Positions 10,640 to 62,627 are shown, counted from the stretch's first letter. The stretch: 64,000 bases of DNA from Hypanus sabinus (GCF_030144855.1 NC_082727.1:36394001-36458000); one strand, 5' to 3'. A program made the numbers and translations. The notes: generated from the letters alone by a model not told the origin.

Positions 10640-10644
10640 ATGAG
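10640..10644 (+). CDS. Candidate coding exon 1 (ATGAG) of IFIT gene 1
   Basis: catcATGAG|GTGAGT: consensus donor with the same catcATGAG context as the exon 1s at 43940 and 59706. It is the nearest ATGAG|GT I found upstream of 16765, giving intron 10645-16764. Confidence 0.6.
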
Positions 10645-11767
10645 GTGAGTCACATCTTCACTTTACAGAATGTTTACCAATGCTAGGAGATTTGACAGCC
10701 ACATTCGCATGGATATCTGGATCAGGTAGATTTAATGTGACCTGTTTCTGGATATTGAGGCATCCAGAAAAGGTGCCAGTGGTCATTCAGCATAAGGATT
10801 TTGGATCTGATCCCAGGTTTGTGATCTGGGAACTTTAACCTGATGCTGGGATCAGAGACCACTGGAGTGGGATGATCCCACAGTATGTGAGCACTCAGTT
10901 TGATATCCCAGGATGTGATAATAATTTGAAACAAGGTCTGTGGTGCTAAGTCACTTAAGGATAGGGAGCTGATTGGGAGTGAGGAAACCAAAAATTACAC
11001 GAAGGAGCATATCCTCCCAATAGATGACATGATTTTTAAGTTCCGCAGTGGGGAACTGACTTTTCCCAGTCAGATGCATTCAGGGAAATGCAGGAACGGT
11101 GACTGAGAGACTAAAGTTTACAACTGTCACTGAGAGGTATAGTGAGCTGAGCAGATGGGGATTAAATGCTGAAAAGGATCATTGGCAAAAAGGTGAGTGA
11201 GAAAAACTGAGGAAACTGGAGTGTGCTTTCAAAAATATGGATACTGGTGAAAGAGCAGAGAAATCCAGGGAAATTATGACACACGGCCGACAAATAACTG
11301 ACGTGACAAACAGAAACATAGCCTTAACCTCAAGGGATGTTGGAATCTATATTTGCTGTGCTACTTCTGTTTAAATCTCTCAATAATTTACTATGGTTGA
11401 ATTCTCAGGTTTATTCTGGGCACGATATTTTAAACAACAGACTCTGAGCTTGGAGACTCTTTCGAATGAGGCTGGTCTTGAAAGCACTAATTCTGAAGAC
11501 AGGTTATGTAGAAAGGCTGATACTTACCTAGATGTTGGCGATTACAGTAAAAGATTTGATAAGGTCCACGGAGAAATCACTCTGCCTGACCTGTTGAGTT
11601 TCTCTAGCACTTTGTGTGTGTTATTCTGCAGAATGTCATGTGTCATGAAAGCACATTCTTTATCTGAACACTTCCTGTCAAAACATCTGGCACTCACGGG
11701 ACAGCAATTTAGTTGTTGGAGGTAATACACACAGAATGCTGGAGGATCTCTGCAGATGAAACAGTAA

Positions 11768-13533
11768 ATCCTCTTGAAGATCAGAGTGATCGGCTATATA
11801 TGAAGCCAAAAGAAAAGGGAGAGATATTAAATGGGCTTTTTGCATCTTTATTTACTAAGTAAACTGGAATGGAGTCTATGGAAACAAGGCAAACAAGTAG
11901 GGAGGTCATGGAATTTATACAGATTAAAGAGGAGGAGGTGCTTGCTGTCTTGAGGGAAATCAGAATAGATAATTCCCTAGGACCTGACAGGGTATTCCCT
12001 TGGACCTTGAAGGAGAGTAGTGTTGAAATTGCAGGGGCCTTGGCAGAAATATTTAAAATGTCGATATCCACGGGTCTGGTGCCAGAGGATTGGAGGATAG
12101 CTCATGTAGTTCCGTTGTTTAAAAAAGACTCAAACATTAAGCCGGGAAATTATAGGCCGGTAAGTTTGATATCGGTAGTAGGTAAATTATTGGAAGGAAT
12201 ACTAAGAGATAGGATTTACAAGTATTTGGATAGACAGGTACTTATTAGAAAAAGTCAGCATGGCTTTGTGTGTGGTAGGTCATGTTTAACCTATCAGAGT
12301 TTTTTGAGGAAGTTACCAGGAAAGTGGATGAAGGGAAGACAGTGGATGTTGTCTACATGGACTTTAGTAAGGCCTTTGACATGGTCCCGCATGGGAGGTT
12401 AGTTAGGAAGATTCAGTCGCTAGGTTTACATGGTGAGGTAGTAAATTGGATTAGACATTGGCTCAGTGGGAGAAGCCAGAGAGTGGTAGTGGAGGATTGC
12501 TACTCTGAGTGGAGGCCTGTGACTAGTGGTGTGCCACAGGGATCAGTGCTGGGTCCATTGTTATTTGTCATCTATATCAATGATCTGGATGATAATGTGG
12601 CAAATTGGATCAGCAAATTTGCTGATGATACAAAGATTGAAGGTGTAGTGGACAGTGAGGAAGGTTTTCAAAGCTTGCAGAGGGATTTGGACCAGTTGGA
12701 GGAATGAGCTGAAAAATGGCAGATGGAATTTAATGCGGACAAGTGTGAGGTATTGCACTTCGGAAGATCAATCCAAGGTAGAACATACAAGGTAAATGGT
12801 AGGACACTGAGGAGCGCAGTAGGACAGAGGGATCTGGGAGTACAGATACATAATTCCCTAAAAGTGGTGTCACAGGTGGATAGGGTTGTAAAGCGAGCTT
12901 TTGGTACATTGGCCTTTATAAATCAAAGTATTGAGTATAAGAGTTGGAATGTAATGGTGAGGTTGTATAAGACATTGGTGAGACCGAATTTGTATTGTGT
13001 GCCGTATTGGTCACCTAATTACAAGAAGGATATTAATAAGTTTGAAAGAGTGCAAAGAAGGTTTACAAGGATGTTGCCGGGACTTGAGAAACTGAGTTAC
13101 AGAGAAAGGTTGAATAGGTTAGGACTTTATTCCCTGGAGCGTAGAAGAATGAGGGGTGATTTGATAGAGGTATATAAAATTATGATGGGTATAGATAGAA
13201 TGAATGCAAGCAGGCTTTTCCCACTGAGGCGAGGGGAGAAATAACCCAGAGGTCATGGGTTAAGGGTGAAGGGGGAATAGTTTAAAGGAAATATGGGGGG
13301 GGGGGGCTTCTTCATGCAGAGAGTGGTGGGAGTGTGGAATGAGCTACCAGATGAAGTGGTGATTGCGGGCTCACTTTTGAAATTTACGAAAAACTTGGAC
13401 AGGTATCTGGATGAGAGGGGTTTGGAAGGATATGGCCCGGGTGCAGGTCAGTGTGAATAGGCAGAAAATAGTTTGGCACAGCCAAGGAGGGCCAAAGGGC
13501 CTATTTCTGTGCTGTAATATTCTATGGCTCTAT
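11768..13533 (+). mobile_element. CR1-clade LINE, 5'-truncated ORF2 (RT), few lesions
   Basis: ORFs with [36 protein letters not shown] and a CR1-type tail (attctatggctctat). Frameshift near 12290, stop at 12705. Inserted within a Penelope-type terminal repeat. Confidence 0.92.
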
Positions 13534-15180: not shown

Positions 15181-16764
15181 TTCATTTATGAAGGCTAATG
15201 TGCCAAAAGCTCTCTTTATAATCTTATTCAACTGTGACAGCTCTTACAAGGGACAATGAATCTGTATTCTCAGATCCCTCTGCTGTACCGTTCATGTGAC
15301 AGTCCTACTTTTTAGAACTTGCAAAGGGCCTGTTCTCATTCAAGGTTCAAAGTTCAATGTGAGTGTTATTGTCAAAGTACATTTATGTTGTTATATTCAC
15401 CCGAGATTCATTTTTGTGGGCATACTCAATAAATCAGTAGAATCAAAATTATAACATAATCAATGAAAGACCACCCTACTAGGGTGCTCAACCAGAGTGT
15501 AGAAGACAAAAAACTTTGCACATATAAAAAAAGGAAATAAATAAACAAACAAACAAACAAATAAATAGATAGTTAGATAGATAACATCGAGGATCTGAGA
15601 TGAAGAGCATTTGAAAGTGGGTCTAATGGCTGTAGGTACATTGCCATAATGGGCCAAGTGAAGTTGAGTGAAGTTTTCCCCATTGGATCAACAGTCTGAT
15701 GTGACTGTGTGGGTTTCCACCGGATGCTCAACTCTCCTCCTACATTATACGGGTTAGGGTGAGTGTGCACGTTGATGCTGGAAACATGGTGACAAACTTG
15801 TCGGCTGCACTGCACAATTCTTCTTCATCTGATATATAGTCAAACAAGGCATTTTGCTGTACATTTTCATGCACCTGATAAGAAAGCTAATCATTAATCC
15901 TCAATTCTTTCAAAATAGGAAGTGATTCAGCTCTGCCATAAACGACATTGTAGATTTGAGCTCTTCGAGTGCATTCAGTACTGAGGTAATACACCAGAGG
16001 AACATGCTACTCTAAACTGTCATAATTTCCAGCCCCTAGCGGCTTTCAGGACAGAATGGAGGAGCTGCATCCACGGTGCGGCAAATTCATCTCCTTTGGG
16101 AGGAAGCAGGAAGCAGAGTTGATCTCAGACTAGGGTTAAAGGTCGGCACAACATGTTCTATGTTCTGTGCTGGTCTATTTTCTTCAGAAATGTGCAGCAG
16201 GATCAGGGGACGTTGCTCATGCAATTGTTCTGTGAACTGGTCTGGTAACTCGTAAATTGCCAGACTTCAGTGGGCTTCACAAAACAGCTTTATCTCACTA
16301 ATGTTATTGAAGTTCTCAATCTTCTAGACATTGAGTCTGAGTACTGGTGGCTGTCTGGGGAAAAGCACCACTTCTCTGTACCGAGATCTGGAGCTATGCT
16401 CAGTCTGCTGGCAAAAAAATGAAAGTCTGCAATAGTGGGAGAGCTCAACGTCTGGTAATAAAACCAAGTCCAGCATCAGTGTAACAAAGCAACAGATCAA
16501 CTGCCTTGGCTGTTCAGGAGACACATTTCCATCTTCATCACATGAATCAATTCTTCATATTGGGTTACTGATCTGAAACATTCTCCTTCCTCAGGTGCAG
16601 ACTGAAGTCTGAGCATTTCCAGGGTTTCAATGCCATAATTATAAAAATTCTTTAAACAACAGCTTTCACACAGTTAGTAAATCTGCTATTCATGGGATTG
16701 CTGGTCAGACCTGCATCAAGTGATCTGAGATGGAATTCATGATTATGTTTTTTCTCTCTTGCAG

Positions 16765-18199
16765 CAACACACCGGGAGATTTATTGAAAGAGAAGCTCGA
16801 TCAGCTGCAGTGTCACTTCACATGGAGGCCACAGAAGGAAATTATTGACGTGGAAGATGTGATGTTCAAATTGCAAGATTCTATTGATATGAATTTGAAG
16901 TATAAAGAGCAGTCCTACAACCAACTCGCTTTTTTAAATTGCCTGCAGGGCAATTGTGAGGAAGCAATTCAAAATTTAAAGGAAGCTGAAAAGATTCTGA
17001 AGGAGAACCATAAAGATGAATTTGAAAGAAGAAGCATCATCACCTATGGAAACTTTGCCTGGGTGCATTACCACATGGGACAACTGACCGAGGCCCAGTC
17101 CTATCTCGACAAGCTGGAGATGACCTGTAAACCGCTCAGTGATGGCCCTCGCTATACAGCAATGATACCCGAGGTGTACGGGGAGAAGGGATGGTCATTG
17201 TTGAGTTCTGGTGGTGAATACTATGAGGAGGCAAAGGAATGCTTTGCAAAGGCTCTGGAGCAAGATCCTGACAACACGGAGTGGATAATGGGATATGCAA
17301 CCGCACTTTCTCGTCTGGAATCAATATCTGGAACCCCAGAGAGTCGGGATCAGAGTCAGTCAGTGAAGCATTTCCAACGAGTATTGGTGCTTGATCCAGA
17401 TGATGCTGTGGCCATGGTGCTGTTGGCTCTAAAACTGCAGAGGTTAGGGCAAAATGAGGAAGCAAATGAATTAGTTGAACAAGCATTGCAGAAGAACTCT
17501 GATCTTCCATATGTGCTTCGCTATGCTGCAAAATATTATAGACAAAAGAGTTCTGTGGAGAAAGCAATCGAGCTCTTGAACAAAGCATTAGAATTAACTC
17601 CACTCTCTGGTTTCTTACACCACCAACTTGGATTGTGCTACAGAAGTAAGCTGAAATACACTCGTTGCAGATATCCTCGCAATCCTGAATTTCAGCAGAA
17701 CCGAGAGTTGATTAATCTGTGCAAGTATCATTTTGAAAAGGCTTTTGAATACCGTCCAAGGTCATTTATTAGAGCTAAACTGGACTTTGCAGACATCTGC
17801 ATCGAAAATGGGGAGTATTCTAGAGCAGAGGAGACTTACCGTAGATTGGTGGAGTTAGTGGACATTCGTCCAGAGAATATGCAGAGCATTTGTCTGGAAG
17901 CTGGGTTATTTGAACTGTACCAGAAAAGATCCGAAACAAATGCTGTTCGCCTCTTCCTGAAAGGAGTGAAAATTGAATATAACTCAAGAGAACGGGAAAA
18001 ATGTCGCAAGAAATTGGTGGAGTGGGCAGATAGGAAACTTAGAGTTAATGCAAATGACAGCAAGGCTCTTGGTGTCAAAGCATTATTATATCAGCTGGAT
18101 GGGAACATGGGTGGTGCAACTGAATACTTTGAGAAGGCCTTGGAGTTTGATCCTGGCAATGAGGAATATGTGAGTGCTCTTTCTCAATTGCACATCTGA
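16765..18199 (+). CDS. IFIT5-like: IFIT-family protein (IFIT5/IFIT1-like), coding exon 2 of gene 1; 479 aa when spliced
   Basis: Intact ORF 16730-18199 with IFIT hallmarks LQCHFTW, YGNFAWVHYH, EKGW, PYVLRYAAKYY, FLHHQLGLCY and C-terminal FEKALEFDP. Acceptor ttttttctctcttgcag ends at 16764, and ATGAG+C gives M-S-N-T-P, the canonical IFIT two-exon layout. Confidence 0.95.
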
Positions 18200-21478: not shown

Positions 21479-21589
21479 TTCTGACAGTTGCTGTAGAAGG
21501 ACTCAGCATCACATCATTGCTTTTATATCCAAACTAGGATTCCCAAGTCCCTTGGCATCTGATTTCTGAAGTTGCTCTCCATTTAGAAA

Positions 21590-22095: not shown

Positions 22096-23540
22096 TCTAC
22101 ACCAGCCCCAGAGGAGTAGATTTAAAAGGTGGGAGGAGGGGAGAGAAAGCCACTGGGTGAGAGGTGAAACCTGGAAGGGGAGGGATGAAGTAAAGAGCTG
22201 GGAAGCTGATTGGTGAGATGAGGTAAGAGAAGGAAAAGGCGATGGGAAATGGAGAAGTGGGGGAAACGTTGGGGAGAATTACCAGAAAATTGAGAAATTG
22301 ATGGAGGCCAGCCAATCAGAATATAAGATATTATTCCTGTAATCTAAGTGTGTCTTTATCATGACAACAGAGGAGGCCATGGATGGACATCAAGTCAAGC
22401 CAAGTCAAGTTTATTGTCATTTCAACCATTGATTGCTGGTACAGTACACAGTAAAAACAAAGTGATGTTTCTCCAGGACCCTGGTGCTACATGAAACAAC
22501 ACAAAACTACACTAGACTATGTGAGACAGCACAAGGCGACACTAGACTACATAAAACAACATAAAAACTCCACTAGACTACAGACCTGCACAGGACTACA
22601 TAAAGTGCACAAAACAGTGCAGGGCAGTACAATAATTAATAAACAAGACAATAGGCACAGTAGAGGACAAATTACAATATAATAATAAATTATGGAGATG
22701 TCAGTCCAGGCTCTGGGTATTGAGGAGTCTGATGGCTTGGGAGAAGAAACTGTTGCACAGTCTGGTCGTGAGAGCCCGAATGCTTTGGTACCTTTTGCTA
22801 GATGACAACGAGGAGAAGAGTTTGTGTGAGGGGTGTGTGGGGTCCTTCACAATGCTGTTAGCTTTGCGGTAGCAGCGTGTGGTGTAGGTGTCTGTAATAG
22901 CAGGAAGAGAGACCCCGATGATCTTCTCAGCTGACCTCACTATCTGCTGCAGGGTATTGTGATCCAGGACGGTGCAATTCCCAAACCAGGCAGTGATGCA
23001 GCTGCTCAGGATGCTCTCGATACATCCTCTGTAGAATGTGGTGAGGATGGGAGGTGGGAGATGGACTTTGCTCAGCCTTCGTAGAAAGTAGAGACATATG
23101 GGAAGTGGAATTAAAATGGCTGGCTACAGGAAAATCCCGCATGTTCTGGCAGACAGAGCGTAATACTCAGTGAATCAGTCTCCCAATCTGTGTTGGGTCT
23201 CACCGATGTACAGGTGGCCACAGTGGGAGCACCCAACATAGTAAACAAACTTAAAAGACTCACAGGTGAAGTGTCGGCTCACCTGGAAGTATAGTTTAGG
23301 GTTGTGTGGGGTTTAAGCTACAACCACCTTCTTCATTCAGTCCAGATTTCAACTTGGAGACCTGCAAAGCTGTATCCATGAAACCAGAAGCCCTTGCTGG
23401 CTCTGAGAACATCACTGTTACTAATGTCTCTGTCTTCCTTCCACAGAACTCTGGGAAGGGGAAAAGCAGGGAAACACAAATAGTTAAAAGGCAGTCTGCA
23501 ATGACTGACAGGTATGCCAAGTAGGCAGAGAAACGATCAA

Positions 23541-23831
23541 CCAATCATGTTTGGTCTGGTGGGCAAAGTGATTTATTACTTATGCTCTGCTAGCCTTCCT
23601 TGTTATTGGATCCAGGCAGCTCTGCATCAGCCTGTATAGTTGTTTCAGTGACATCACTTCTTGGAAAATACTGCTTTCATTTTCTAGGATAAGTTTCTAT
23701 TCAGCATCAGGGAGTTGCAGTCAATCTGTTCGAGCAGGAAATCAGAACATCGGACACCCTGCACCATTGATATTAAAGGTCCATCGGAAGCTGTGAAAGA
23801 CGTTCAAGGAATTTTCTTTCAAAAGAACATA
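23541..23831 (+). promoter_or_regulatory. Type I interferon-responsive promoter, copy B (gene 2)
   Basis: CCAAT at 23541, GAS TTCTTGGAA at 23658-23666, ISRE at 23673-23685, AGTTTCTATTC at 23692-23702. Confidence 0.8.
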
Positions 23832-23836
23832 ATGAG
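23832..23836 (+). CDS. Coding exon 1 (ATGAG) of IFIT gene 2 (type I module)
   Basis: ataATGAG|GTAGTG downstream of a CCAAT/GAS/ISRE promoter; phase compatible with the acceptor at 25484. Confidence 0.75.
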
Positions 23837-24577
23837 GTAGTGAGCACTGTAAATTAAATTTTTTTTTTAATTTACTGTATTAACTTAGGTATTTAAATTT
23901 ATTTTTTAACCATTGCACAGAAGCTTGATTATGGAAGTATGCTGAATGCATTGCTATAACTGTATTTAGTGCACTATGTTGGTGTTGCGCATTCATGGGC
24001 ACATCATTAAAGGCAGATCAGGCTGCTTGTGTCGAAAGTAAAGCAGAGTTATTATTTCAGGTCAATAAGCTTTCATTGCAAAAAATGATCTCCCAGTTAA
24101 ACAGATTACAGCCCAGTCACTTGTTTCAACAACTTCACACAAAAAAGCATATCCAGTGCTTTCTGTTGTTATTTAGACGTTAAGTATCTGCAACACTCTC
24201 TGTACCATTTTGGATGCTCAGCAGTACCAAGACTGGTGAGAGTCAAACATCAGACAATCTCAGCGTCATACAGACAAAAATAGGCCTTTTGCCCATCATT
24301 AAGGTGCTGCTTCATAATTGGCCGATCAGCTATTTGCATTAACGAGCGGGTGTACAGGTGTACATAATAGAGTGTACAACTTGATGAATAGGGTAATAAT
24401 GTACATATAAAATAAAAGTAACTTCCATTTGGGCTAGGTATATGTACAACTTGAAATTTATTCACGTGCTGTTTATAGTTTGGTGAATACAGTAACTATC
24501 GGCTTTGTTACAAGAAATGATGTGAAAAAATGATTATGTATGAAGTGATGAATTTCATGAATTTTCTTCACTTGCAG

Positions 24578-25205
24578 CAACACACAAAGAGATTTGTTGA
24601 AAGAGAAGCTCGATCAGCTTCAGTGTCACTTCACGTGAGACCCTCAGAAGGGAACCATTGACTTGAAAGATGTGACGTACAGACTGCGAGATGCTATAAA
24701 TCTCGGTGTGAAATATCAAGCCACGTGATGTGTCACAACCAAATCGCTTTCATAAATTGTCTGCAGGGTAACAATAAAGAAGCCATTCAGAGCTTCAATG
24801 AAACTCTCGCTATCCTGCATTTTGCCAGAAAGCAAAGTTGTTTAATCAATGTAAATATCACTTTGGAAAGGCATTTGAGCATCGTCCAATATCAGCTATT
24901 GAACCACAACTGAATTTTGCATTTATAAATGTAAGAAATGGAGAGTATTCCAAAACAAAAAGATCTACAGTACTCTTTTGAAATTAGATGATATTCATCC
25001 AGAAAATTTGCACAGAATACAGTACGTCTACATGTGGGACATTTGAATTATACCAGAGAGGATGTAAATCAAATGCCATCAGCCTGTTCCGTAATGCACT
25101 GACAGTTGAATATGATTCAAATGAATAGAAGAAAGTGTCATGATAAATTGGAGATGAGGACTGACAAAAACCTTTGCAAGGATCCACATGATAGTAAGGC
25201 TCTGG
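24578..25205 (+). pseudogene. Internally deleted IFIT exon-2 pseudogene B inside the gene 2 intron
   Basis: Own acceptor ttttcttcacttgcag (AG 24576-24577), then NTQRDLLKEKLDQLQCHFT-stop (TGA 24636-24638). About 0.7 kb internal deletion near 24805; ends at a DSKAL-like sequence. Confidence 0.9.
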
Positions 25206-25484
25206 AATAAGGAATTCCTATCATTTTGGTTAGTCGGATCACTTGACTGTACTCTTGCTTCCTGCACACTGACAGAGCCTAAGGTGACTTGCATGTTCTC
25301 TGATAAAACATTTTACTGATGGACAGGCTGAGCATTTCCAGGTTTTCAATACCATAATTAAAAAAAATACTTTAGAAGGCAACTTCTATACAGTCAGTAA
25401 ATCTGCTTTTTCTGGGATTGCAGGTCAGACCTGCATCAAGTGATCTGAGATGGAATTCATGATTCCGTTTTTTCTCTCTTGCAG

Positions 25485-26919
25485 CAACACACCGGGAGAT
25501 TTATTGAAAGAGAAGCTCGATCAGCTGCAGTGTCACTTCACATGGAGGCCACAGAAAGAAACTATTGATGTGGAAGATGTGAAGGACAGATTGCAAGATT
25601 CTAACCATATGAATTTGAAGTATAAAGATCAGTCCTACAACCAACTCGCTTTTGTAAACTGTCTGCAGGGCAATTATTTGGAAGCAATTCAAAATTTAAA
25701 GGAAGCTGAAAAAATTCAGAGGGAGAACCACAAAGATGAATATGAAAGAAGAAGCATCATCACCTATGGAAACTTTGCCTGGGTGCATTACCACATGGGA
25801 CAGCTGACCAAGTCCCAGTCCTATCTCGACAAGCTGGAGATGATCTGTAAACCGCTCAGTGATGGCCCTCGCTATACAGCAATGATACCCGAGGTGTACG
25901 GGGAGAAGGGATGGTCATTGATGAGTTCTGCTGGTGAATACTATGAGGAGGCAAAGGAATGCCTTGCAAAGGCTCTGGAGCAAGACCCTGACAACACTGA
26001 GTGGATAATGGGATATGCAACCGCACTTTCTCGTCTGGAATCAATGTCTGGAACCCCAGAGAGTCGTGATCAGAGTCAGTCAGTGAAGTATTTCGGACGA
26101 GTACTGGAGCTTGATCCAGATGATACTGTGGCCATGGTGCTGTTGGCTCTAAAACTGCAGAGGTTAGGGCAAAATGAGGAAGCAAATGAATTAGTTGAAC
26201 AAGCATTGCAGAAGAACTCTAATCTTGCATATGTGCTTCGCTATGCTGCAAAATATTATAGACAACGGGGATTTGTGGAGAGGGCAATTGAGCTCTTGAA
26301 ACAAGCATTAGAATTAACTCCACACTCTGGTTTCTTACACCACCAACTTGGATTGTGCTACAGAAGTAAGCTGAAATACACTCACAGCAGATATCCTCGC
26401 AATCCTGAATTTCAGCAGAAAGCTGAGTTGATCAATCTATGCAAATATCACTTTGAAAAGTCTTTTGAACACCGTCAAAGGTCAGCTATTAAACCGCAAC
26501 TGGTCTTTGCAGACATCTGCATAACAAGTGGGGAGTATTCCAGAGCAGAGGAGACTTACCGTAGATTGGTGGAGTTAGTGGACATTCGTCCAGAGAATAT
26601 GCAGAGCATTTGTCTGGAAGCTGGGTTATTTGAACTGCACCAGAAAAAATCTGAAACAAATGCTGTTTGCCTCTTCCTGAAAGGAGTAAAAATTGAATAT
26701 AACTCAGAAGAACGGGAAAAATGTCGCACAAATTTGGAGAAGTGGGCAGTTAGGAAACTTATAGTTAATGCAAATGACAGCAAGGCTCTTGGTGTCAAAG
26801 CATTACTGTATCAGCTGGATGGGAACAAGGATAAAGCGACTGAATACTTTGAGAAGGCCTTGGAGTTTGATCCTGGCAATGAGGAATATGTGAGTGCTCT
26901 TTCTCAATTACACATCTGA
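25485..26919 (+). CDS. IFIT5-like: IFIT-family protein, coding exon 2 of gene 2; 479 aa spliced
   Basis: Intact ORF 25450-26919 with the same IFIT motifs; acceptor AG at 25483-25484. About 60 amino-acid differences from gene 1 by manual count. Confidence 0.95.
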
Positions 26920-29408: not shown

Positions 29409-29428
29409 TATATATATATATAATATAC

Positions 29429-29489: not shown

Positions 29490-30983
29490 TGGAGTTATTT
29501 GATGAACAATCGATGTTATCGTTTCTCTGCAGACTGTTTACTTTTTACAAGGACACACACACACACAGAGACACATAGCTAGAGTTAAGATGGATTCGGT
29601 CAATGGAAGGCACAAGTAGCAAATCATTGTTGGAGTAATTTTGTATGTCCTGGAACTGGATAAGTGGCTATCACGTTGTGTGTGATTGGGGTAACTTTGT
29701 GGAATTTACTGGTGTGTCGGCCCTTGCCTGGGTGGTGGCTCCCTTGAAGATGGTCCCCTTTATGATAAGTTACTGTTGGTAATAATACATATGTGAATCC
29801 TGTTTGAGTATGCTGTGACCACCACTTTGAGATGTCCCGTAGCTGTATCGGGTGTGGTACCACTTGGTTTGAAAGTATTTTCATTGAACATCACCGTCGG
29901 TGATACTTCATGTGTGGAGTGGAACAACTTTGGAGAGAAAACCTACTGCAATTGTTATTTAGTATTGCTGTCGTGGAATCTGTGGAATATTGTAATTGCT
30001 TTCTCACAACACTCGCCTTTGGATTGCAAACATCTCGCATTAATTAACCTGTGCATCTGAACGGAACTTTTCTAACATACCATCGTAAGAGTGGAACTAT
30101 TGCCGCCTGAGCTTGAATGAGCTTGGAAACTTTATTTTTTACACCTATAGATGTATAATACCTTTAACTCTTGATTTACCTGGTTTAAGTTACTATATGA
30201 CATAGTCACTAATAAAATAGTGTTTTGTTAACAGCAAAACCAGACTCCAGCTGTGTTCTGTTGCTGCTGATACTTTGACAGGGTTGTGTGTACCTGACAA
30301 GGGCACTGAATGGTAGTGAGTGAGGAGGTGCAGGTGCAGGTGTAGCACTTGCAAGGTTAAGTGCCAGGAAGGAGACCAGTGGGGAGGGACGAATAGACAA
30401 GGGATTCGAGTAGGGAGTGATCCCTGCGGAAAGAGGAAGGTGACTGGAGGGAAAGATGTGCTTGGTGGTGGGATCACGTTGGAGGTGGCAAATCTCTGGT
30501 AGGGTGTCAGGAGAATGGGGTAAGTGCAGACGTGCAGCATGTACTCACAAACGAATCTCTGGATCCAGCAGCTGCTGCATCAGCACACACTGTAGTCTCT
30601 GGTCCCCAAAGGCAACAAAATTCAGCTGTACAGTGCTATTATTCATTCATGCAGTGGAATTATTTGAGGACAAATATGATTTATTCCAGGTTAAATCAAT
30701 TTTATTTCATAACCTTAAAAATATTGTGCTATGCAATGGAATTTCTAGGCACATGAACAATAAAGACAAGCCATTTTTTTCAGAACTGCTGTCTGTCACA
30801 CATTAACTACACTCATGAGGTCAATGTAGGTCTTACTGCACTGTGTTGAGGTACTATGGACTGCCTCTGTCACTTCACTACACTGTCCTCTAGGGGGCGA
30901 TACACTACCCTCTGGGGTGATGGGGTGTGTGCGGTTTAATGTAGAACAATCTCGTTCATCCAGTCCAGATTTCAACTTAGATC

Positions 30984-31289
30984 AGCCAATCAGGTTGTGT
31001 CTGCTAGGCCAAGTTATTTATTTCTGTTGTTATCCCACCCTGCCTTTGTTGTTGGATACTGAGAGCTCTGCATCAGTCTTCATTGTTGTTTCAATGACAT
31101 CATTGCTTAGAAAAAGCAGGTTTCGTGTTCTGGGATAAGTTTCGATTCACCATCAGGAAGGTGCAGATAATCTGTTAGAGCAGGAAATCAGAATGTAGGG
31201 TACCCTTCTCCATCAACTCAGCATTAAAAGTCCTTCTGAAACAGTGAAAGAAATTCAAAGAACATTCTTTCTGAAGAATGTAATGTGTT
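30984..31289 (+). promoter_or_regulatory. Type I promoter/exon 1, copy C, donor destroyed
   Basis: Homologous to copies A and B. GAS is lost, IRF-like AGTTTCGATTC remains at 31138-31148, and exon 1 reads ATGTG|TTACAG (31283-31289). Confidence 0.6.
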
Positions 31290-31998
31290 ACAGAACTCCG
31301 TAAATTGAATTGTATTTTTAAATATTTTTATTCATTTCTGTATTTAAATTTATTTTTTAACCATGCAAAGAAACTTGATTATGTAAACATGCTGAATGCA
31401 TTAATATAACTGTACCTGGAGCACAGTATTGGGGTTGTGCATTCATAGGAACATTATTAAAGGCAGATCAGGCTGTTTCTGTCGAAAGTAAAGCAGAGTT
31501 ATTATTTCAGGCCAATAAGTCTTAAATGCAATAAATTATTTCTCATTTAAACAGATTATAGCCCAGTCACTTGTTTCAACAACTTCAGACAAAATAAGCA
31601 TATCCAGTACTTTCTGCTGTTATTTCGACATCTGGTGTCTTCAACACTTTCTGTACCATTTTGGATGCTTAGCAGTACCTACTGGTGAGAGTCAGACATC
31701 AGACAATCTCAGCGCCACACAGACAAAAATAGGCCTTTGGCTCATCATTGAGTTGCTGTCACGTGATTGGCCGATCGCATATTTGCATTAACGAGCAGGT
31801 GTACAACTTCATGTATAGAGTAATAATGTAAATATAAAATAAAAGTAACTTCCATTTGGGGTCTGTATATGTACAACTTGAAATTTATTCATAAGTTGTT
31901 TAAAGTTTGGTGGACTCTCGGCTTTGTTACAAGTAATGATGTGAAGAAAAATGATCATGTATGAAGTGATGAATTTCATGAATTTTCTTCACTTGCAG

Positions 31999-36672: not shown

Positions 36673-37380
36673 AGGGCACTGAATGGTAGTGAGTGAGGAG
36701 GTGCAGGTGCAGGTGTAGCACTTGCAAGGATAAGTGCCAGGAAGGAGACCAGTGGGGAGGGACGAATAGACAAGGGATTCGCGTAGGGAGTGATCCCAGC
36801 GGAAAGAGGAAGGTGAGTGGAGGGAAAGAGGAAGGTGAGTGGAGGGAAAGATGTGCTTGGTGGTGGGATAACGTTGGAGGTGGCGAATCTCTGGTAGGGT
36901 GTCAGGATAATGGGGTAAGTGTAGACGTAAAGCATGACCTCACAAACGAATCTCTGGATCCAGAAGCTGCTGCATCAGCACACACTGTAGTCCCTGGACC
37001 CCAAAGGCAACAAAATTCAGCTGTGCAGTGCCGTTATTCATTCATGCAGTGGAATTATTTGAGGACAAATATGATTTATTCCAGGTTAAATCAATTTTAT
37101 TTCATAACCTTAAAAGCATTGTGCTATGCAATGGAATTTCTAGGCACATGAATGATAGAGACAAGCCAAGTTTTCTCAGAACTGCTGTTTGTCACACATT
37201 AACTACACTCATGAGGTCAATGTAGGTCTTACTGCACTGTGTTGAGGTACTATGGACTGCATCTGTCACCTCACTACACTGTCCTCTAGGGGGCGATACA
37301 CTACCCTCTGGGGTGATGGGGTGTGTGCGATTCAATGTAGAACAATCTCGTTCATCCAGTCCAGATTTCAACTTAGATCA

Positions 37381-37685
37381 GCCAATCAGGTTGTGTCTGC
37401 TAGGCCCAGTTATTTATTACTGTTGTTATCCCACCCTGCCTTTGTTGTTGGATACTGAGAGCTCTGCATCAGTCTTCATTGTTGTTTCAATAACATCATT
37501 TGTTTGAAAAAGCTGGTTTCGTGTTCTGGGATAAGTTTCGATTCACCATCAGGAAGGTGCAGATAATCTGTTAGAGCAGGAAATCAGAACGTAGGGTACC
37601 CTTCTCCATCAACTCAGCATTAAAAGTCCATCTGAGACAGTGAAAGAAATTCAAAGAACATTCTTTCTGAAGAACATAATGTGTT
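37381..37685 (+). promoter_or_regulatory. Type I promoter/exon 1, copy D, donor destroyed
   Basis: Duplicate of copy C; AGTTTCGATTC at 37534-37544; ATGTG|TT at 37679-37685. Confidence 0.6.
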
Positions 37686-38393
37686 ACAGAACACTGTAAA
37701 TTGAATTGTATTTTTAAATATTTTTATTCATTTCTGTATTTAAATTTATTTTTTAACCATGCAAGGAAACTTGATTATGTAAACATGCCGAATGCATTAT
37801 TATAACTGTACCTGGTGCACAGTGTTGATGTTGTGCATTCATAGGCACATTATTAAAGGCAGATCAGGCTGCTTCTGTTGAAAGTAAAGCAGAGTTATTA
37901 TTTCAGGCCAATAAGTCTTAATTGCAAGAAATTATTTCTCATTTAAACAGATTATAGCCCAGTCACTTGCTTCAACAACTTCAGATAAAATAAGCATATC
38001 CAGTATTTACTGCTGTTATTTAGATGTCTGGTGTCTTTAACATTTTCTGTACCATTTTGGATGCTTGGCAATACCTACTGGTGAGAGTCAGACATCAGAC
38101 AATCTCAGCACCACACAGACAAAAATAGGCCTTTGGCTCATCATTGAGTTGCTGCCACGTGATTGGCCGATCGCATATTTGCATTAACGAGCAAGTGTAC
38201 AACTTGATGTATACGGTAATAATGTAAATATAAAATAAAAGTAACTTCCATTTGGGGTCTGTATATGTACAACTTGAAATTTATTCATGTGTTGTTTAAA
38301 GTTTGGTGGACTCTCGGCTTTACTACAAGTAATGATGTGAAAAAAATGGTCATGTATGAAGTGATGAATTTCGTGAATTTTCTTCACTTGCAG

Positions 38394-42699: not shown

Positions 42700-44065
42700 T
42701 GGACTCTGATAATACATTTTACTTTGAACCTCAGAGTTCTGAGGATTAACAAGCAGAGATAATTGAAAGGAAATGTATTTAGATTTCCGGAAGGTATTCA
42801 ATGCAGTGTCTGTAAACTGTGTAGTTTACTGTACTGTGGTGGATAACGCTCAGTTCATCACAGGAAAAGACCATCCCAGCACTGAGCTTATCCACAGAAA
42901 CTACTGTCATAAGAAAGTAGCCTCCCCCATCAAGGTCCACCACCATCTAGGACATGCAATCTTCTCACTACTGCCATCGGGAAGGAGGTACAGGAGCCTT
43001 AGGTCCCACACTACCAGGTTCAAAAACAGTTATTGCTCTTCAACCATTAGGCTCCTTGCAGTAACACCGTGCAAGAGGAATGTAGATGTCAATTTTTTAA
43101 GACAGTGAACAAGTGAGACGAGACCTAGACTAGATCTTCCTGGACTGGGCATTGTGGCAATGAGAAAAAATAAGTAATAATCTTTTTCCTGTTTGGGCTG
43201 TTTAGAGGGTAGCCATAACAGATTAGAATTCTTCATTAATGTGTTGTGTGAAGTCACAGAATGAAATCAAGGGTGTGAATCTGAACAAATAAAATTATGA
43301 GGACCCAATTGATTGGCAAATGATTCAATGAGTTGATCGTTGTATGACGTTTGAGGAATGAACTGCAACAATATTTCACTTGTGATTGGAACAAAAATAC
43401 GTTAGAACAGAAGGGTGAACCGTGTGAGGGAAATTCAACACAGTATCAGACCAAAAAAAAGCAGCAGCTTGGGGATTGGAGCAGTTTAGACTTCAGCCAA
43501 GGAGGGCAGAAAGATTGATTCAAAGTGGTAAAATGAATTGTGAGAGTAAACCGGCAGGGGACATAAAATTGATGGTAGATATGGAGAAGTAAAATAAGAT
43601 AGTAATCAGAATTGTAGTAGATAGTTTACAATCAGAAACAGGGAAAATTATAATTAGTTGAAAGAGAATGCTCAGAACAACCCATTGCACTGGCATTTTG
43701 CTAACACAAATTATTTCAATGGTTGAGCAATGTTTATTCAGGAAATGTTTCCAAATTGCTTTTCATTGCCTTAGTGTTATCAATCGGCTTTGAATTTGAG
43801 TTTCTACGGACAATCAGGAAGTAATGGACAGTATAAGCGGGTGTCAGGTCGAACATCAGATGCAACAACGGAGACTCAGCAGAAGAAGAACCGCACAAAC
43901 TGAGAAAGAGCACAAATTGCTTTCCATCCAACGAACATCATGAGGTAAAGGACGTTTCCTTGCAGTTTATCTTTATGTACAGATTATTATAGAGTACGTG
44001 GTTTATGAAAATTAGTGAATCATAACCTTTGAAATACCCAGAATGGACAACGACTGTCCTGACAG
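42700..44065 (+). repeat. Collapsed paralog of 52630-52980 joined to 58800-59840
   Basis: ORF 42773 matches ORF 52696; from ~43059 the sequence matches 58800 onward. Confidence 0.8.
43740..43939 (+). promoter_or_regulatory. Type II promoter/5'UTR paralog, partly degenerate
   Basis: Homologous to 59500-59705. ISRE-like site altered to AGTTTCTACGG (43799-43809); TATAAG at 43832. Confidence 0.5.
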
Positions 44066-58170: not shown

Positions 58171-59499
58171 ACCACTTATATTGTAAGGTCAACACTCCAT
58201 CTTACTGTACGAGGGATCCATTCAAGAGCCTGATAACAGCAGGATAGAGCTACCGTTGAGCATGGTTTAACATGCTTTCAGGTGTTTGTGTCTTCTGCCG
58301 AGAGGGAGAGGAGAGAAGGAAGATCATCCGGAGGGGATTATGCTGGCTGCTTTACTGAGGTAGTGACAAGTGTAGACCAAGTCCACAAGGAGGAGGCATG
58401 TTAACATGATATGCTGAGCTGTGTCCAGAACTGCATTTCCTTGTGGTCTCGTGCAGAGCAGTTGCCAGAAGAGGCTGTGATATGGCCCGATACAATGATG
58501 TCAATGGTACATCAATAAAATTCAGTCAGAGTGCCAGATTTATTTTGCACTTGTGAGCTTTCTCAAGTGTGGTGTCAACATGATTGTACCAGGAATGTAC
58601 AAAGTGAATGTTCCACTGTAAATTATCCTCAGTTGGCTGAATGTTGTGTTGGGTATTCGTCAACATTTACCTGTAAGGATATCAATGCCACTTGAAAATT
58701 GCAGACAGCATGACATTTTTACACACAATGATGATATGCAGGGAGAAATTGGAAACCATGTTTCAGAACAGTGCAAATGTAACCACAAGTTATATACAGC
58801 AGTAATACTGTGGATAAGGAATACATGGATGCAATTTTTTTAAGGCAAATAACAGATGAGATGGGATCTAGACAGGATTGAGACTAGATTGTCATGTAGT
58901 GGGTATTGTGCCAATGAGAAAGAATAATTAACAATTCTGTCCTGTATGGGCTGTTTAAGGAGTGGCCATAACAGATTAGTATTCATCATTTATATGCTGG
59001 GTGAAGTCACAGTATGAAATCAAGGGTGTGAATCTGAACAAATGAAATTATGAGGACCCAATTGATTGGCAAACTATTCAATGGGTTGATCATGAATGGG
59101 CACTGTATGATGATAAAGAATGAACTGCAACAATGATTCATTCCTGATTGGCACGAAAAGACGTAAGGAATGAAGGGTCAACCCTGTGAAGGAAATTCAG
59201 CACAGAATTAGACCCACAAAAAGCAGCAGTTTTGAGAATTGGGATTAGAGTTCAGCCAAGGAGGAAAGAAAGATTGATTAACAGATGTAAGATGTAGTAT
59301 GAGAGTAAACAGGCAGGAAACATTAAACTAATAGTAAATATGGAAAAGTGAAAGAGGATAATGACCAGGATTGCAGACTGCATACAATTACACAAAGAAA
59401 AAATTATAAATAATTGAACAAGGATGCTCAGAGTGACACACTACACAGGCATTCTGGTGAGGTGTAGACTATTTCTATGACAAATCAATGCTTATATTG

Positions 59500-59705
59500 G
59501 CATGCAGGAAATACTTCTAAATTCTTTTAATTGCTTCAGTGTTATTTATAGACATTGAATTCCAGTTTCTATTCACATTGATGAAGTAATGGATAGTATA
59601 AAGGGTTGTCAGGTTGAACATCCAACGCAACATCGTAGGCGCAGCAGAAGAAGAACTGCACAAACTGAGTGAGGAGCGCAAAGTGCTTTCAATCCAGCTA
59701 ACATC
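59500..59705 (+). promoter_or_regulatory. Type II promoter/5'UTR (gene 3)
   Basis: ISRE-like AGTTTCTATTC at 59564-59574 and TATAAA at 59597-59602, about 105 bp before the ATG. Confidence 0.7.
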
Positions 59706-59710
59706 ATGAG
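59706..59710 (+). CDS. Coding exon 1 (ATGAG) of IFIT gene 3 (type II module)
   Basis: catcATGAG|GTAAAG downstream of an ISRE-like site and TATAAA; intron 59711-61192. Confidence 0.8.
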
Positions 59711-61192
59711 GTAAAGAATATTTCCTTGCAGTCCATCTTTATGTACAGATTATTATACAGCAGGTTGTTTATCAAAAATAGTGGATCATAATGCAATAAC
59801 TTTGAAATACCCAAAGTGAACATACACTGGCTAACAGGGTAGTTGAATGATGAGACTGTAGTAGGGTGATCCCTACGTTACTCTGCAGTGCTTTACTATT
59901 ATTTTTTGTTATTAACATCCAATACAATGGCTCTAAACACAAGATTTGCATTGGATTCCTGATTTTTGAAGAGCCTTCTGTTCTGTCTGATCACCAGATC
60001 CAAGAGTAAGTTCAAGTGATCATAAATAATCCTTACACACGGTATTCCTTAACTCCTTAACATTCTCTCTATGTATGAGAATTTCCTTTGGGTTCACAGG
60101 AATCAGCTGCAAGTCATGTAGTTGCAGCAAATTTATGAGATGTTCCTCCTAAATTCCAATGATGTACGGGTTAGGGTGAGTGTGCACGTTGATGTGGGAC
60201 ACACTTGTCACCTGCCCTGATAAATTCTTTCTGATCTGATATGATGCCAAATGATGCATTTCACTGTTTGTTTTGATGTACGTGTGACAAAGACAGCTAA
60301 TCTTTAATCTTCGAATCTTTAAACGTAGGAGGTGATTCAGTTCTGCCATACACTATATCTATGTAGATTTGAGCACGTTGGAGCCTACGGGGTGCATTCA
60401 GTACTGAGGTAATACACCAGAGGAACATGCTACTCTAAACTGTCATAATTTCCAGCCCCTAGTGGCTTTCAGGACAGAATGGAGGAGCTGCATCCACGGT
60501 GCGGCAAATTCATCTCCTTTGGGAGGAAGCAGTAAGCAGAGTTGATCTCAGAGTAGGGTTAAAGGTCGGCACAACATGTTCTATGTTCTATGTTGGTCTA
60601 TGCTCTTTCAGAAATGTTCAGCAGGATCGGGGTACGTTGCTCATGCAATTGCTCTGTGATCTGATCTGGTAACTCGTAAATTGCCAGACTTCAGTGAGCT
60701 TCACAATACAGCTTTATCTCACTAATGTTATTGAAGTTCTCAATCTTCTAGACATTGACTCTGAGTACTGGTGGCTGTCTGGGGGAAAGCACCACTTCTC
60801 TGTACTGAGATTTGGAGCTACGCTCAGGCTGCTGGCAAAAAAACAAAAGTCTGCAATAGTGGGAGAGCTCAACGTCTGGTAATAAAACCAAGTCCAGCAT
60901 CAGTGTAACAAAGCAACAGATCAGCTGCCTTGGCTGTTCAGGAGACACATTTCCATCTTCATCACATGAATCAATTCTTCATATTGGGTTACTGATCTGA
61001 AACATTCTCCTTCCTCAGGTGCAGACTGACAGGCTGAGCATTTCAGGTTTTCAATATCATAATTATAAAAAAAACTTCATCAAAAGGCAGTTTTCACACA
61101 GTTAGTAAGTCTGCTATTCACGGGATTGCAGGTCAGACCTGCATCAAGTGATCTGAGATGGAATTCATGATTCCGTTTTTTCTCTCTTGCAG

Positions 61193-62627
61193 CAACACAC
61201 CGGGAGATTTATTGAAAGAGAAGCTCGATCAGCTGCAGTGTCACTTCACATGGAGGCCACAGAAGGAAACTGTTGATGTGGAAGATGTGAAGCTCAAATT
61301 GCAAGATTCTATCAATATGAATATGAAGTATAAAGCGCAATCCTACAACCAACTTGCTTTTTTAAACTCTCTGCAGGGCAATTATGAGGAAGCAATTCAA
61401 AATTTAAAGGAGGCTGAAAAGATTCTGATGGAGAACCACAAAGATGAATATGAAAGAAGAAGCATCATCACCTATGGAAACTTTGCCTGGGTGCATTACC
61501 ACATGGGACAGCTGACCGAGGCCCAGTCCTATCTCGACAAGCTGGAGATGATCTGTAAACTGCTCAGTGATGGCCCTCGCTATACAGCAATGATACCCGA
61601 GGTGTACGGGGAGAAGGGATGGTCATTGTTGGGTTCTGCTGGTGAATACTATGAGGAGGCAAAGGAATGCTTTGCAAAGGCTCTGGAGCAAGATCCTGAC
61701 AACACTGAGTGGATAATGGGATATGCAACCGCACTTTCTCGTCTGGAATCACTTTCTGGAACCCCAGAGAGTCGTGATCAGAGTCGGTCAGTGAAGTATT
61801 TCCGACGAGTACTGGAGCTTGATCCAGATGATGCTGTGGCCATGGTGCTGTTGGCTCTAAAACTGCAGAGGTTAGGGCAAAATGAGGAAGCAAATGTATT
61901 AGTTGAACAAGCATTGCAGAGGAACTCTAATCTTCCATATGTGCTTCGCTATGCTGCAAAATATTATAGAAAAAAGAGTTCTGTGGCGAAAGCAATCAAG
62001 CTCTTGAAACAAGCATTAGAATTAACTCCACACTCTGGTTTCTTACACCACCAACTTGGATTGTGCTACAGAAGTAAGCTGAACTACACTCGTTGCAGAT
62101 ATCCTCGCAATCCTGAATTTCAGCAGAACCCAGTGATGATCAATCTGTGCAAGTATCATCTTGAAAAGGCTTTTGATCACCGTCGAAGGTCATTTATTAA
62201 AGCACAACTGGACTTTGCAGACATCTGCAGAACAAATGGGGAATATTCCAGAGCAGAGGAGACTTACCGTAGATTGGTGGAGTTAGTGGACATTCGTCCA
62301 GAGAATATGCAGAGCATTTGCCTGGAAGCTGGGTTATTTGAACTGTACCAGAAAAAATCTGAAACAAATGCTGTTCGCCTCTTCCTGAAAGGAGTGAAAA
62401 TTGAATATAACTCAGAAGAACGGGAAAAATGTCGCATGAATCTGGAGAAGTGGGCAGGTAGTAAACTTAGAGTTAATGCAAATGACAGCAAGGCTCTTGG
62501 TGTCAAAGCATTTCTGTATCAGTTGGATGGGAACACGGATAAAGCGACTGAATACTTTGAGAAGGCCTTGGAGTTTGATCCTGGCAATGAGGAATATGTG
62601 AGTGCTCTTTCTCAATTACACATCTGA
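61193..62627 (+). CDS. IFIT5-like: IFIT-family protein, coding exon 2 of gene 3; 479 aa spliced
   Basis: Intact ORF 61158-62627 with IFIT motifs; acceptor AG at 61191-61192. Confidence 0.95.

What the first reader, a model, noticed from the sequence alone, without database searches (positions are those of the whole stretch)
10640..62627. Three closely similar IFIT coding cassettes plugged into three unrelated promoter/exon-1 modules
Seen: the exon-2 cassettes share their acceptor region and about 87% protein identity (gene 1 vs gene 2, manual count). Their nearest ATGAG|GT exons lie in non-homologous modules: 10640 (unique, weak motifs), 23832 (CCAAT+GAS+ISRE) and 59706 (ISRE-like+TATA). Known: IFIT exon 1 contributes only ATG plus 2 nt, so any exon 1 is phase-compatible with any exon 2. 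Inference: the cluster diversifies regulation by swapping a single-exon coding cassette between promoters, which could give STAT/GAS-responsive versus IRF-only versus weakly inducible copies.
Basis: partly seen in the sequence, partly recalled or inferred. Interest (0 to 1): 0.75.

Follow-up and report, generated by a model that had tools for sequence, protein, structure and literature searches.

The report
Stingray IFIT array, shuffled first exons
Three near-identical antiviral IFIT coding exons in an Atlantic stingray gene array sit behind different upstream start-exon modules, because deletions and duplications removed the normal promoter from two of them. Which replacement first exons are really used remains untested.

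Summary
The window is Hypanus sabinus CM057995.1:36394001-36458000, part of an IFIT1-like tandem array of at least 650 kb.

**Confirmed**
- There are three intact 477-codon exon-2 cassettes, 87.6-89% identical in protein.
- Their acceptors are near-identical.
- ATGAG|GT stands at 10640, 23832 and 59706.

**"Three unrelated modules" is only partly right**
- Modules 2 (type A) and 3 (type B) are remote homologues. Profile searches match in both directions, and both carry AGTTTCTATTCA about 140 nt before the ATG.
- Only the 10640 module (M1) matches neither.
- B is the native promoter/exon 1, conserved as far as Mobula. Only g3 keeps it.
- g2 lost B through a deletion. It now lies behind the promoter of a dead paralogue, whose stop-carrying exon with an intact acceptor sits in between.
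- g1 lost B before the Hypanus/Hemitrygon split, yet stayed under purifying selection (pN/pS 0.35).

- RefSeq starts g1 at 6194, in a second A copy.
- The H. akajei orthologue starts at the M1 equivalent.
- g2 is modelled from an intronic ATG.
- g3 has no protein on record.

**Limits**
- Regulatory diversification is untested.
- First readers noted similar promoter re-wiring in neighbouring windows of this genome; those notes are unchecked.

The parts
16765..18199 (+). g1 exon 2 (477 codons plus stop). It equals residues 9-486 of RefSeq XP_059804091.1 (P0003).
25485..26919 (+). g2 exon 2. RefSeq models it as a 489-aa single-exon CDS from the intronic ATG at 25450 (P0128).
61193..62627 (+). g3 exon 2. 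The ORF is intact, but no protein model is on record.
59407..59765 (+). Type-B module, the native promoter and exon 1 of g3. ISRE-like AGTTTCTATTCA at 59564-59575, TATAAA at 59597-59602, exon 1 ATGAG at 59706-59710, donor GTAAAG.
   Evidence: B-type exon 1 is used in the models of paralogue P0009 and of Mobula P0014.
60479..60531 (+). Type-C alternative first exon inside g3 intron 1 (MEELHPRCGKFISFGRK...). The donor CA|GTAAGC is intact here.
16056..16108 (+). Type-C copy in g1 intron 1. The donor position reads GG, which is the ancestral state, so it is not a splice donor.
23533..23887 (+). Type-A module upstream of g2. CCAAT at 23541, TTCTTGGAA at 23658, ISRE-like at 23674-23684, AGTTTCTATTCA at 23692-23703, ATGAG|GTAGTG at 23832.
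24578..25228 (+). Dead A-type IFIT exon (psi) between the A exon 1 and g2 exon 2. Its acceptor is intact, it has a TGA within the CHFTW motif, and it has an internal deletion (aa 90 to 317).
25224..25321 (+). Junction in g2. A remnant of the spacer that normally lies upstream of a B module (82% to 42630-42723) abuts intron position -163. The B module and most of intron 1 are deleted.
5913..6272 (+). Type-A copy A0, 86% identical to the 23832 module. The CDS start of the RefSeq g1 model is at 6194, and ATGAG|GTACAG is at 6215.
7015..7815 (+). psi0, a truncated and frameshifted g-type exon 2 behind A0. It has the same acceptor as the cassettes, and its first 35 nt are identical to g1 exon 2.
10552..10644 (+). 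GAAACT plus the TATA-like TAAATAAA at 10552-10564, and ATGAG|GTGAGT at 10640. It is orthologous to exon 1 of the H. akajei model XP_072882915.1.
15748..16764 (+). The part of g1 intron 1 that is shared with g3 (60165-61192, 92%). Homology stops at 15748, and no B module lies upstream.
43651..43998 (+). Second type-B copy (B2; ATGAG|GT at 43940). It is followed only by a C-terminal IFIT remnant at 44128-44274.
30979..31338 (+). Dead type-A copy. The donor is lost (ATGTGTT). Its psi exon lies at 31985-32427.
37375..37734 (+). Dead type-A copy. The donor is lost (ATGTGTT). Its psi exon lies at 38377-38822.

Best explanation
The window is a stretch of a birth-and-death tandem array of IFIT1-like genes in the Atlantic stingray.

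**The native gene unit**, conserved as far as Mobula, reads in order:
- a type-B promoter with an ISRE-like element and a TATA box;
- a 5-nt coding exon 1;
- an intron of about 1.5 kb;
- a 1.43-kb exon 2.

**What each cassette has now**
- g3 still has the native unit.
- g2 lost it through a deletion that fused a spacer remnant to intron position -163. This leaves g2 1.65 kb behind the promoter and exon 1 (type A) of an older, now dead paralogue. That paralogue's stop-carrying exon, with an intact acceptor, lies in between.
- g1 lost B, and in comparison with the paralogous P0006 unit another distal first exon too. This happened before the Hypanus/Hemitrygon split. g1 now has only heterologous candidates upstream: M1 at 10640 and the A0 copy at 6194-6219.

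**Why the cassettes look alike.** Exon 2 and its last ~160 intron bases are kept similar across the array by duplication and gene conversion, while the 5' modules lie outside that shared block.

**How the modules relate.** A and B descend from the same ancestral IFIT promoter/exon 1. M1 is unrelated to both.

**Shown here:** the homologies, the break-points, the public gene models, and purifying selection on B-less g1.

**Inferred:** which first exon each cassette uses in vivo, and any regulatory consequence.
For: **Identity of the locus**
- L001 positions 3808-32006 equal window 1-28199 at 100%.

**The canonical B - C - exon 2 unit**
- It is seen in L002, L003, L005, L006 and L007.
- All 7 B copies keep ATGAG|GTAAAG, including the two Mobula copies.
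- In the window the B profile gives strong hits only at 43651-43998 and 59407-59765.

**Break-points**
- g1/g3 homology starts at 15748/60165. g2/g3 homology starts at 25322/61028.
- g2 positions 25224-25317 and psi0 positions 6755-6848 match spacer 42630-42723 at 82-84%.

**A and B are remote homologues**
- The A profile scores 15-29 on 5 of 7 B copies, against a maximum of 6.4 in 2100 shuffles.
- The B profile scores 19.6 on 23637-23839, against a maximum of 11.5 in 2400 shuffles.
- AGTTTCTATTCA with up to 1 mismatch occurs 5 times, all in A or B modules. The expected count is 0.73.

**g1 and its orthologue**
- The H. akajei locus is colinear with the window (93.8% over 9.4 kb) and also lacks B.
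- pN/pS between g1 and that orthologue is 0.35, Fisher p 5e-6.

**Gene models**
- P0003 starts at window 6194.
- P0007 starts at the orthologue of 10640.
- P0128 is g2, read from 25450.

**Gene conversion**
- The nearest paralogue changes along each cassette.
- g2 and g3 are 94.2% identical in the CDS but 97.2% in the 3' flank.
Against: - First-exon usage therefore rests only on automated gene models.
- Those models disagree between species for g1. They may be ab initio, or they may be misled by junction reads that cannot tell psi0 from g1, since the first 35 nt are identical.
- M1 is no better conserved than the surrounding intron, quantile 0.12-0.38.
- g3, the supposedly canonical gene, has no protein on record.
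- pN/pS between g2 and g3 is 0.74 and not significantly below 1, p 0.21. One of the two may be unconstrained.
- The A-B homology is weak for the 59706 copy itself (score 3.7) and holds by transitivity through the other B copies.
Confidence: 0.65

Rival explanations
1. The three modules at 10640, 23832 and 59706 are the first exons actually used, and selection has kept them to give three differently regulated copies: GAS/STAT-responsive, IRF-only and weakly inducible.
For: - All three have an intact ATGAG|GT with A at -3.
- The H. akajei model uses the M1 orthologue.
- Among A copies, only those followed by a g-type exon 2 keep the donor GT.
- B-less g1 is under purifying selection.
- The GAS-like and ISRE-like motifs of A are shared by A0 and by the H. 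akajei orthologues.
Against: - The H. sabinus RefSeq models use 6194 for g1 and an intronic ATG for g2.
- A strong decoy acceptor followed by a stop lies between 23836 and 25485.
- The motifs are short and frequent. TTCNNNGAA occurs 35 times.
- A and B share the same ISRE-like element, so an 'IRF-only versus GAS' split is not evident.
- M1 shows no extra conservation.
Confidence: 0.2
2. g1 is transcribed from the A0 copy (exon 1 at 6194-6219), as RefSeq models it. In that case g1 and g2 use homologous A-type modules, and only two module types serve the three cassettes.
For: - The CDS of XP_059804091.1 starts at window 6194 and joins exon 2 at 16765.
- A0 is 86% identical to the 23832 module, with the same motifs.
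- A 26-nt coding exon 10.5 kb upstream is unlikely to be chosen without RNA support.
Against: - The psi0 acceptor at 7015 has the same sequence, is 9.7 kb nearer, and shares its first 35 nt with g1 exon 2. Short junction reads could therefore have been assigned to the wrong exon 2.
- The orthologue's model uses M1 instead.
Confidence: 0.35
3. g2, and possibly g3, are promoter-poor or silent copies on the way to becoming pseudogenes. Their ORFs look intact because the copies are young and are repeatedly overwritten by gene conversion from live paralogues.
For: - pN/pS between g2 and g3 is 0.74 and not significant.
- There is no spliced RefSeq model for g2 and no protein at all for g3.
- The window holds six dead IFIT fragments, so decay is common here.
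- Conversion tracts form a mosaic along the cassettes.
Against: - The g2/g3 pair has 83 substitutions in 1435 nt but no indel and no stop.
- g3 has a complete B module with TATA, the ISRE-like element and an intact donor.
Confidence: 0.25
4. The cassette is autonomous for translation. An in-frame ATG lies 35 nt before the acceptor (16730, 25450, 61158). Any transcript that reads into exon 2 without splicing would therefore make full-length IFIT with 12 extra residues, so the upstream exon 1 would not matter.
For: - The ATG and the open frame are kept in all ten copies examined, including Mobula.
- RefSeq models g2 (P0128) and another paralogue (P0129) in this way.
Against: - This is the usual result when a gene predictor extends an ORF for lack of a spliced first exon.
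- The ATG lies inside the perfectly conserved polypyrimidine/acceptor region, so its conservation is explained by splicing.
- No promoter-like motif is visible in 25100-25450.
Confidence: 0.1

Closest known systems
Vertebrate IFIT gene clusters (Liu et al. 2013, PMC3688568)
   Same: - TPR-only IFIT1/5-like proteins.
- Two-exon genes in which exon 1 carries the ATG plus 2 nt.
- ISRE-type elements close to a TATA box.
- Lineage-specific tandem expansion.
   Different: - The array here is much larger, at least 650 kb on one chromosome.
- Two of the three intact cassettes lack the native promoter/exon 1 and lie behind heterologous or paralogous 5' modules.
- The ISRE-like element is imperfect (TGAATAGAAACT).
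Recurrent gene conversion between IFIT1 and IFIT1B in mammals (Daugherty et al. 2016, PMC4887208)
   Same: Paralogous IFIT coding exons are partly homogenised, which produces mosaic ancestry along the gene.
   Different: - Many paralogues exchange segments along the whole exon here, not only the 5' part.
- The shared block ends about 160 nt into intron 1, so the promoters are not homogenised.
Chimeric genes and promoter capture by deletion or unequal crossing-over in tandem arrays (general principle, from my own knowledge)
   Same: Break-points in an intron place an intact downstream coding exon under the nearest upstream first exon of a neighbouring, dead, paralogue.
   Different: Use of the captured promoter is not demonstrated here. 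For g2 a decoy exon with a stop codon intervenes.

Membership tests
IFIT family (IFIT1/IFIT5-like) | Protein of about 470-490 aa built of TPR repeats, with significant similarity to solved IFIT structures | tested here: met
   E 8.7e-109 to IFIT1 (5w5h) and 5.8e-104 to IFIT5 (3zgq). Multiple TPR Pfam families match.
IFIT family (IFIT1/IFIT5-like) | Two-exon gene in which exon 1 contributes the ATG plus 2 nt | tested here: inconclusive
   The acceptor phase fits in all three cassettes. g3 has a B-type ATGAG|GT that is homologous to the exon 1 used in the P0009 and Mobula models. For g1 and g2 the first exon is unresolved.
IFIT family (IFIT1/IFIT5-like) | ISRE within about 200 bp of the TATA box or transcription start | tested here: inconclusive
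   Only imperfect ISRE/IRF-E-like sites were found: 59564 (22 nt before the TATA box) and 23674 and 23692 in A. The only two strict GAAANNGAAACT sites in the window lie elsewhere, at 33022 and 54789.
IFIT family (IFIT1/IFIT5-like) | Induction by interferon or viral stimuli | not testable with these tools
Promoter capture / chimeric gene by rearrangement in a tandem array | Break-point inside the intron, separating the coding exon from its native promoter | tested here: met
   g2: a spacer remnant is fused to intron position -163. g1: homology to the native intron stops at -1017 and no B module lies upstream.
Promoter capture / chimeric gene by rearrangement in a tandem array | Transcripts that join the foreign first exon to the coding exon | not testable with these tools
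   Only automated gene models are available. They support 6219>16765 in H. sabinus and the M1 orthologue in H. akajei. None supports 23836>25485.
Concerted evolution by gene conversion | Mosaic nearest-paralogue pattern along the coding exon | tested here: met
   The nearest paralogue changes along each cassette: for g2 mainly P0006 and P0011, for g3 among g1, P0009, P0011 and P0006. The CDS is more diverged than the 3' flank in the g2/g3 pair.

The most novel reading that the evidence does not exclude
In batoid IFIT arrays the exon-2 cassette may be a truly portable unit. It carries its own acceptor and a conserved in-frame ATG 35 nt upstream. Copies that lose the native interferon-type promoter could then be kept by selection under quite different first exons:
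- the dead paralogue's A promoter;
- the TATA-bearing M1;
- a GC-rich distal exon of the P0006 type.

This would give constitutive, tissue-specific and inducible IFIT1-like proteins from one array.
Probability: 0.2. Interest if true: 0.6.

Novelty: new member of a known kind. Interest (0 to 1): 0.35.

Why it matters
If the B-less cassettes are really expressed from foreign first exons, the stingray array would be a natural example of an antiviral effector family diversifying its regulation through structural turnover of promoters rather than through point changes. It would also show that automated annotation of such arrays is unreliable, since identical acceptors and identical first 35-66 nt of exon 2 make junction reads ambiguous. 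As it stands, this is a well-resolved description of an ordinary birth-and-death ISG array, with one solid non-trivial point: g1 has been maintained by selection without its native promoter.

Tried and rejected
- **Transcript-derived protein fragments.** A search with the first 120 residues of g3 found none from this species.
- **Joined products.** I did not search the spliced exon 1 + exon 2 products. Only exon-2 translations were used, by reference.
- **Pairwise alignment of the three modules.** Smith-Waterman found nothing. Only profiles built from all copies revealed the A-B relation.
- **Constraint on M1.** Sliding identity against H. akajei gave no signal.
- **Strict motifs.** Strict ISRE and GAS consensus scans gave no hit in any of the three modules.
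- **Promoter before the intronic ATG of g2.** Nothing convincing was seen.
- **g3 ORF product.** An exact look-up found it is not on record.
- **Rejected: M1 as a relic of a B- or A-type exon 1.** There are no profile hits.
- **Rejected: type C as a shared first exon of g1 and g3.** The donor is GG in g1.


Full report
**Identity of the locus**

Locus L001 was fetched through the NCBI protein P0003. Its positions 3808-32006 match window 1-28199 at 100%. The window is therefore Hypanus sabinus (Atlantic stingray), assembly GCA_030144855.1, CM057995.1:36394001-36458000. A second locus, L008, confirms the offset. IFIT1-like paralogues lie from 36.33 Mb (L002) to 36.98 Mb (L003) on the same chromosome. 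The window is thus a slice of a tandem array of at least 650 kb.

**The observation**

Three 489-codon ORFs lie at 16730-18199, 25450-26919 and 61158-62627. From the acceptors at 16765, 25485 and 61193 each encodes 477 residues.
- Protein identity is 87.6-89.0% and nucleotide identity 93-94%.
- The 40 nt before the acceptor are almost identical.
- ATGAG|GT stands at 10640, 23832 and 59706.

The proteins are IFIT1/IFIT5-like, E 9e-109 to PDB 5w5h, and are made of TPR repeats.

However, ATGAGGT is a common word. There are 16 copies in the window against 12.7 +/- 3.6 in shuffles, roughly one per 10 kb per strand.

**What else is in the window**

A self-comparison and a tblastn search with g1 show six further IFIT fragments:

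| Fragment | Coordinates | Residues covered |
|---|---|---|
| psi0 | 6980-7747 | aa 1-256, frameshifted |
| psi (between module 2 and g2) | 24561-25228 | aa 7-90 plus 317-453 |
| psi copy | 31985-32427 | same internal deletion |
| psi copy | 38377-38822 | same internal deletion |
| C-terminal remnant | 44128-44274 | aa 440-488 |
| fragment upstream of B | 57864-58169 | aa 59-164 |

Profiles built from all copies place the 5' modules as follows.
- Type-A modules lie at 5913-6272, 23533-23887, 30979-31338 and 37375-37734.
- Type-B modules lie at 43651-43998 and 59407-59765.

**The native unit**

The same order is found in paralogous loci of H. sabinus (L002, L003, L006, L007) and in Mobula hypostoma (L005). 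It runs: B module with ATGAG|GTAAAG, about 770 nt, a conserved stretch that I call C, about 660 nt, then exon 2.
- All seven B copies keep the start codon and the donor. Five keep the TATA box: the copy at 43940 has only TATAA and the L002 copy has lost it. All seven keep the ISRE-like core, though only two (59706 and one Mobula copy) carry the full 12-mer.
- RefSeq models of P0009 and of Mobula P0014 begin exactly at a B-type ATGAG.
- g3 has this complete unit.
- g3 also has a derived GT at 60532. This turns C into a possible alternative first exon, as used in the model of paralogue P0011. In g1 and most other copies that position reads GG.

**How g2 lost B**

Homology between g2 and g3 begins only 163 nt before the acceptor, at 25322/61028. 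Immediately upstream, 25224-25317 matches spacer 42630-42723 at 82%. In the native arrangement that spacer lies about 335 nt before a B module.
- A deletion therefore removed B and most of intron 1.
- The same junction is present in psi0, so it predates the duplication that produced the 3838-7815 and 21477-26248 units.
- What remains upstream of g2 is a type-A promoter and exon 1 with that gene's own dead exon. This exon has an intact acceptor at 24577|24578, a TGA inside the CHFTW motif and an internal deletion. These facts agree with note s1-228362.

**How g1 lost B**

g1 shares 1017 nt of intron with g3 (92% identity), and the homology then stops. No B profile hit lies upstream.
- The segments 7825-11175 and 13704-15544 recur in the P0006 locus L007. 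There they are followed by a GC-rich first exon (METVSSRPS), a B module, C and exon 2. This suggests that g1 lacks about 9 kb which in that unit carries both first exons.
- The H. akajei locus L004 is colinear with window 3909-26262, at 93.8% over 9.4 kb, and also lacks B. The loss therefore predates the split of the two species.
- Even so, pN/pS between g1 and its orthologue is 0.35, Fisher p 5e-6. A cassette without its native promoter has stayed under purifying selection, which implies that it is expressed from something else.

**Are the modules unrelated?**

Pairwise, they are: the Smith-Waterman z-scores are at most 2.3. With profiles, A and B are not unrelated.
- The A profile aligns colinearly over about 190 nt (proximal promoter plus exon 1) to B copies, with E 4.6e-8 in L005 and 1.5e-5 at window 43797-43978.
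- The B profile hits 23637-23839 (E 3.6e-5) and 6020-6226.
- No score from 2100 and 2400 dinucleotide shuffles reaches the top real scores.
- The 12-mer AGTTTCTATTCA occurs exactly twice, 140 and 142 nt before the two ATGs.
- With one mismatch it occurs five times, always in A or B modules, against 0.73 expected.

A and B are thus diverged versions of one ancestral IFIT promoter/exon 1. This fits the roughly 75% identity between the psi exons and the g-type exon 2. M1 matches neither profile.

**Which first exons are used?**

I also left out any search with joined exon 1 + exon 2 products, and used only exon-2 translations by reference. Public gene models give mixed signals.

- **g1.** H. sabinus XP_059804091.1 (P0003) matches g1 exon 2 at 100%, and its CDS starts at window 6194, in the A0 copy. 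Its N-terminus MFLQKNVMS is the translation of 6194-6219 plus the first base of exon 2. The orthologous H. akajei model XP_072882915.1 (P0007) instead starts at the exact counterpart of 10640, and its gene span is 7571 nt against 7560 nt in the window.
- **g2.** It is modelled as a 489-aa single-exon CDS from the in-frame intronic ATG at 25450. This is the typical result when no spliced first exon is supported.
- **g3.** No protein model was found.

There are caveats on the g1 evidence.
- The psi0 acceptor at 7015 is identical to that of g1, and the first 35 nt of the two exons are the same. Short junction reads from A0 could therefore have been credited to the wrong exon.
- M1 has a perfect donor (GTGAGT).
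- Its TATA box is intact (TATATAAA) in the two H. akajei copies and in a second H. sabinus copy, but is weakened to TAAATAAA in the window.
- M1 is no better conserved than the surrounding intron.

**Why the cassettes look alike**

The nearest paralogue changes along each cassette. g2 and g3 are 97.2% identical in 1371 nt of 3' flank but only 94.2% in the CDS, with no indel in the CDS. This mosaic points to gene conversion among many paralogues, as described for mammalian IFIT1/IFIT1B (PMC4887208). pN/pS among the three cassettes is 0.57-0.74, and the g2/g3 value is not significantly below 1.

**Verdict**

- **Structure.** The structural observation stands and is more than chance. It reflects loss of the native promoter by deletion, in an array that also contains an older dead paralogue series. 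It does not reflect cassettes being plugged into unrelated promoters.
- **Count of module kinds.** 'Three unrelated modules' should read 'two diverged homologous kinds plus one unrelated candidate'. For g1 a second, A-type candidate is the one the species' own annotation uses.
- **Regulation.** Regulatory diversification is plausible but untested. RefSeq models in the family use A, B, C, M1, a GC-rich distal exon and the intronic ATG.
- **Known background.** The two-exon IFIT structure with a 5-nt coding exon 1 and ISRE-bearing promoters is established (PMC3688568).
- **Classification.** I file this as a new member of a known kind of system, of moderate interest.
- **Most useful single fact.** g1 has been conserved without its native promoter.

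Noticed in passing
window 29616-35480 and 35989-41848: A 5.9-kb tandem duplication (94.8% identity). Each copy carries a dead type-A module (donor mutated to ATGTGTT) and an internally deleted IFIT exon.
   Followed up: partly
window 43940-44274: A type-B2 exon 1 with intact ATGAG|GT is followed after about 190 nt by only the last ~49 codons of an IFIT exon 2. This is the 'mini-IFIT' of note s1-228336. The rest of the exon is deleted.
   Followed up: partly
window 16730, 25450, 61158 (and 6980): An in-frame ATG lies 35 nt before the acceptor (MEFMI.FFLSCS). It is kept in all ten copies examined, including Mobula. RefSeq uses it for the 489-aa models P0128 and P0129.
   Followed up: partly
window 25485-28290 versus 61193-63998: The coding exon of g2/g3 is more diverged (5.8%) than the 1.37-kb 3' flank (2.8%). 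This points to conversion from other paralogues or to diversifying selection.
   Followed up: partly
window 11869-13244 (+): A frameshifted LINE reverse-transcriptase ORF series lies inside the long stretch between M1 and g1 exon 2. The segment 13706-15181 is an inverted copy of 50126-51558.
   Followed up: no
L007 10001-10028 (H. sabinus, about 49 kb beyond the window end): A GC-rich distal first exon (METVSSRPS) is joined to a cryptic acceptor 13 nt inside exon 2, skipping a B-type exon 1. The same N-terminus appears in models from H. akajei and two Mobula species.
   Followed up: partly
L005 8136 and 10001 (Mobula hypostoma): Two tandem B-type first exons lie 1.9 kb apart. Both are listed as 5-nt coding starts of 479-aa products, so one cassette appears to have two alternative first exons.
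   Followed up: no
window 57864-58169: An isolated IFIT fragment (aa 59-164, about 43% identity) lies 1.5 kb upstream of the B module of g3. The P0006 locus has the same arrangement.
   Followed up: no
L006 10001-10237 and 21923-23371: RefSeq model P0023 joins an exon just upstream of a dead A core and a short psi mini-exon to a g-type exon 2 11 kb away, in frame. Chimeric A-psi-g models recur in this array.
   Followed up: partly
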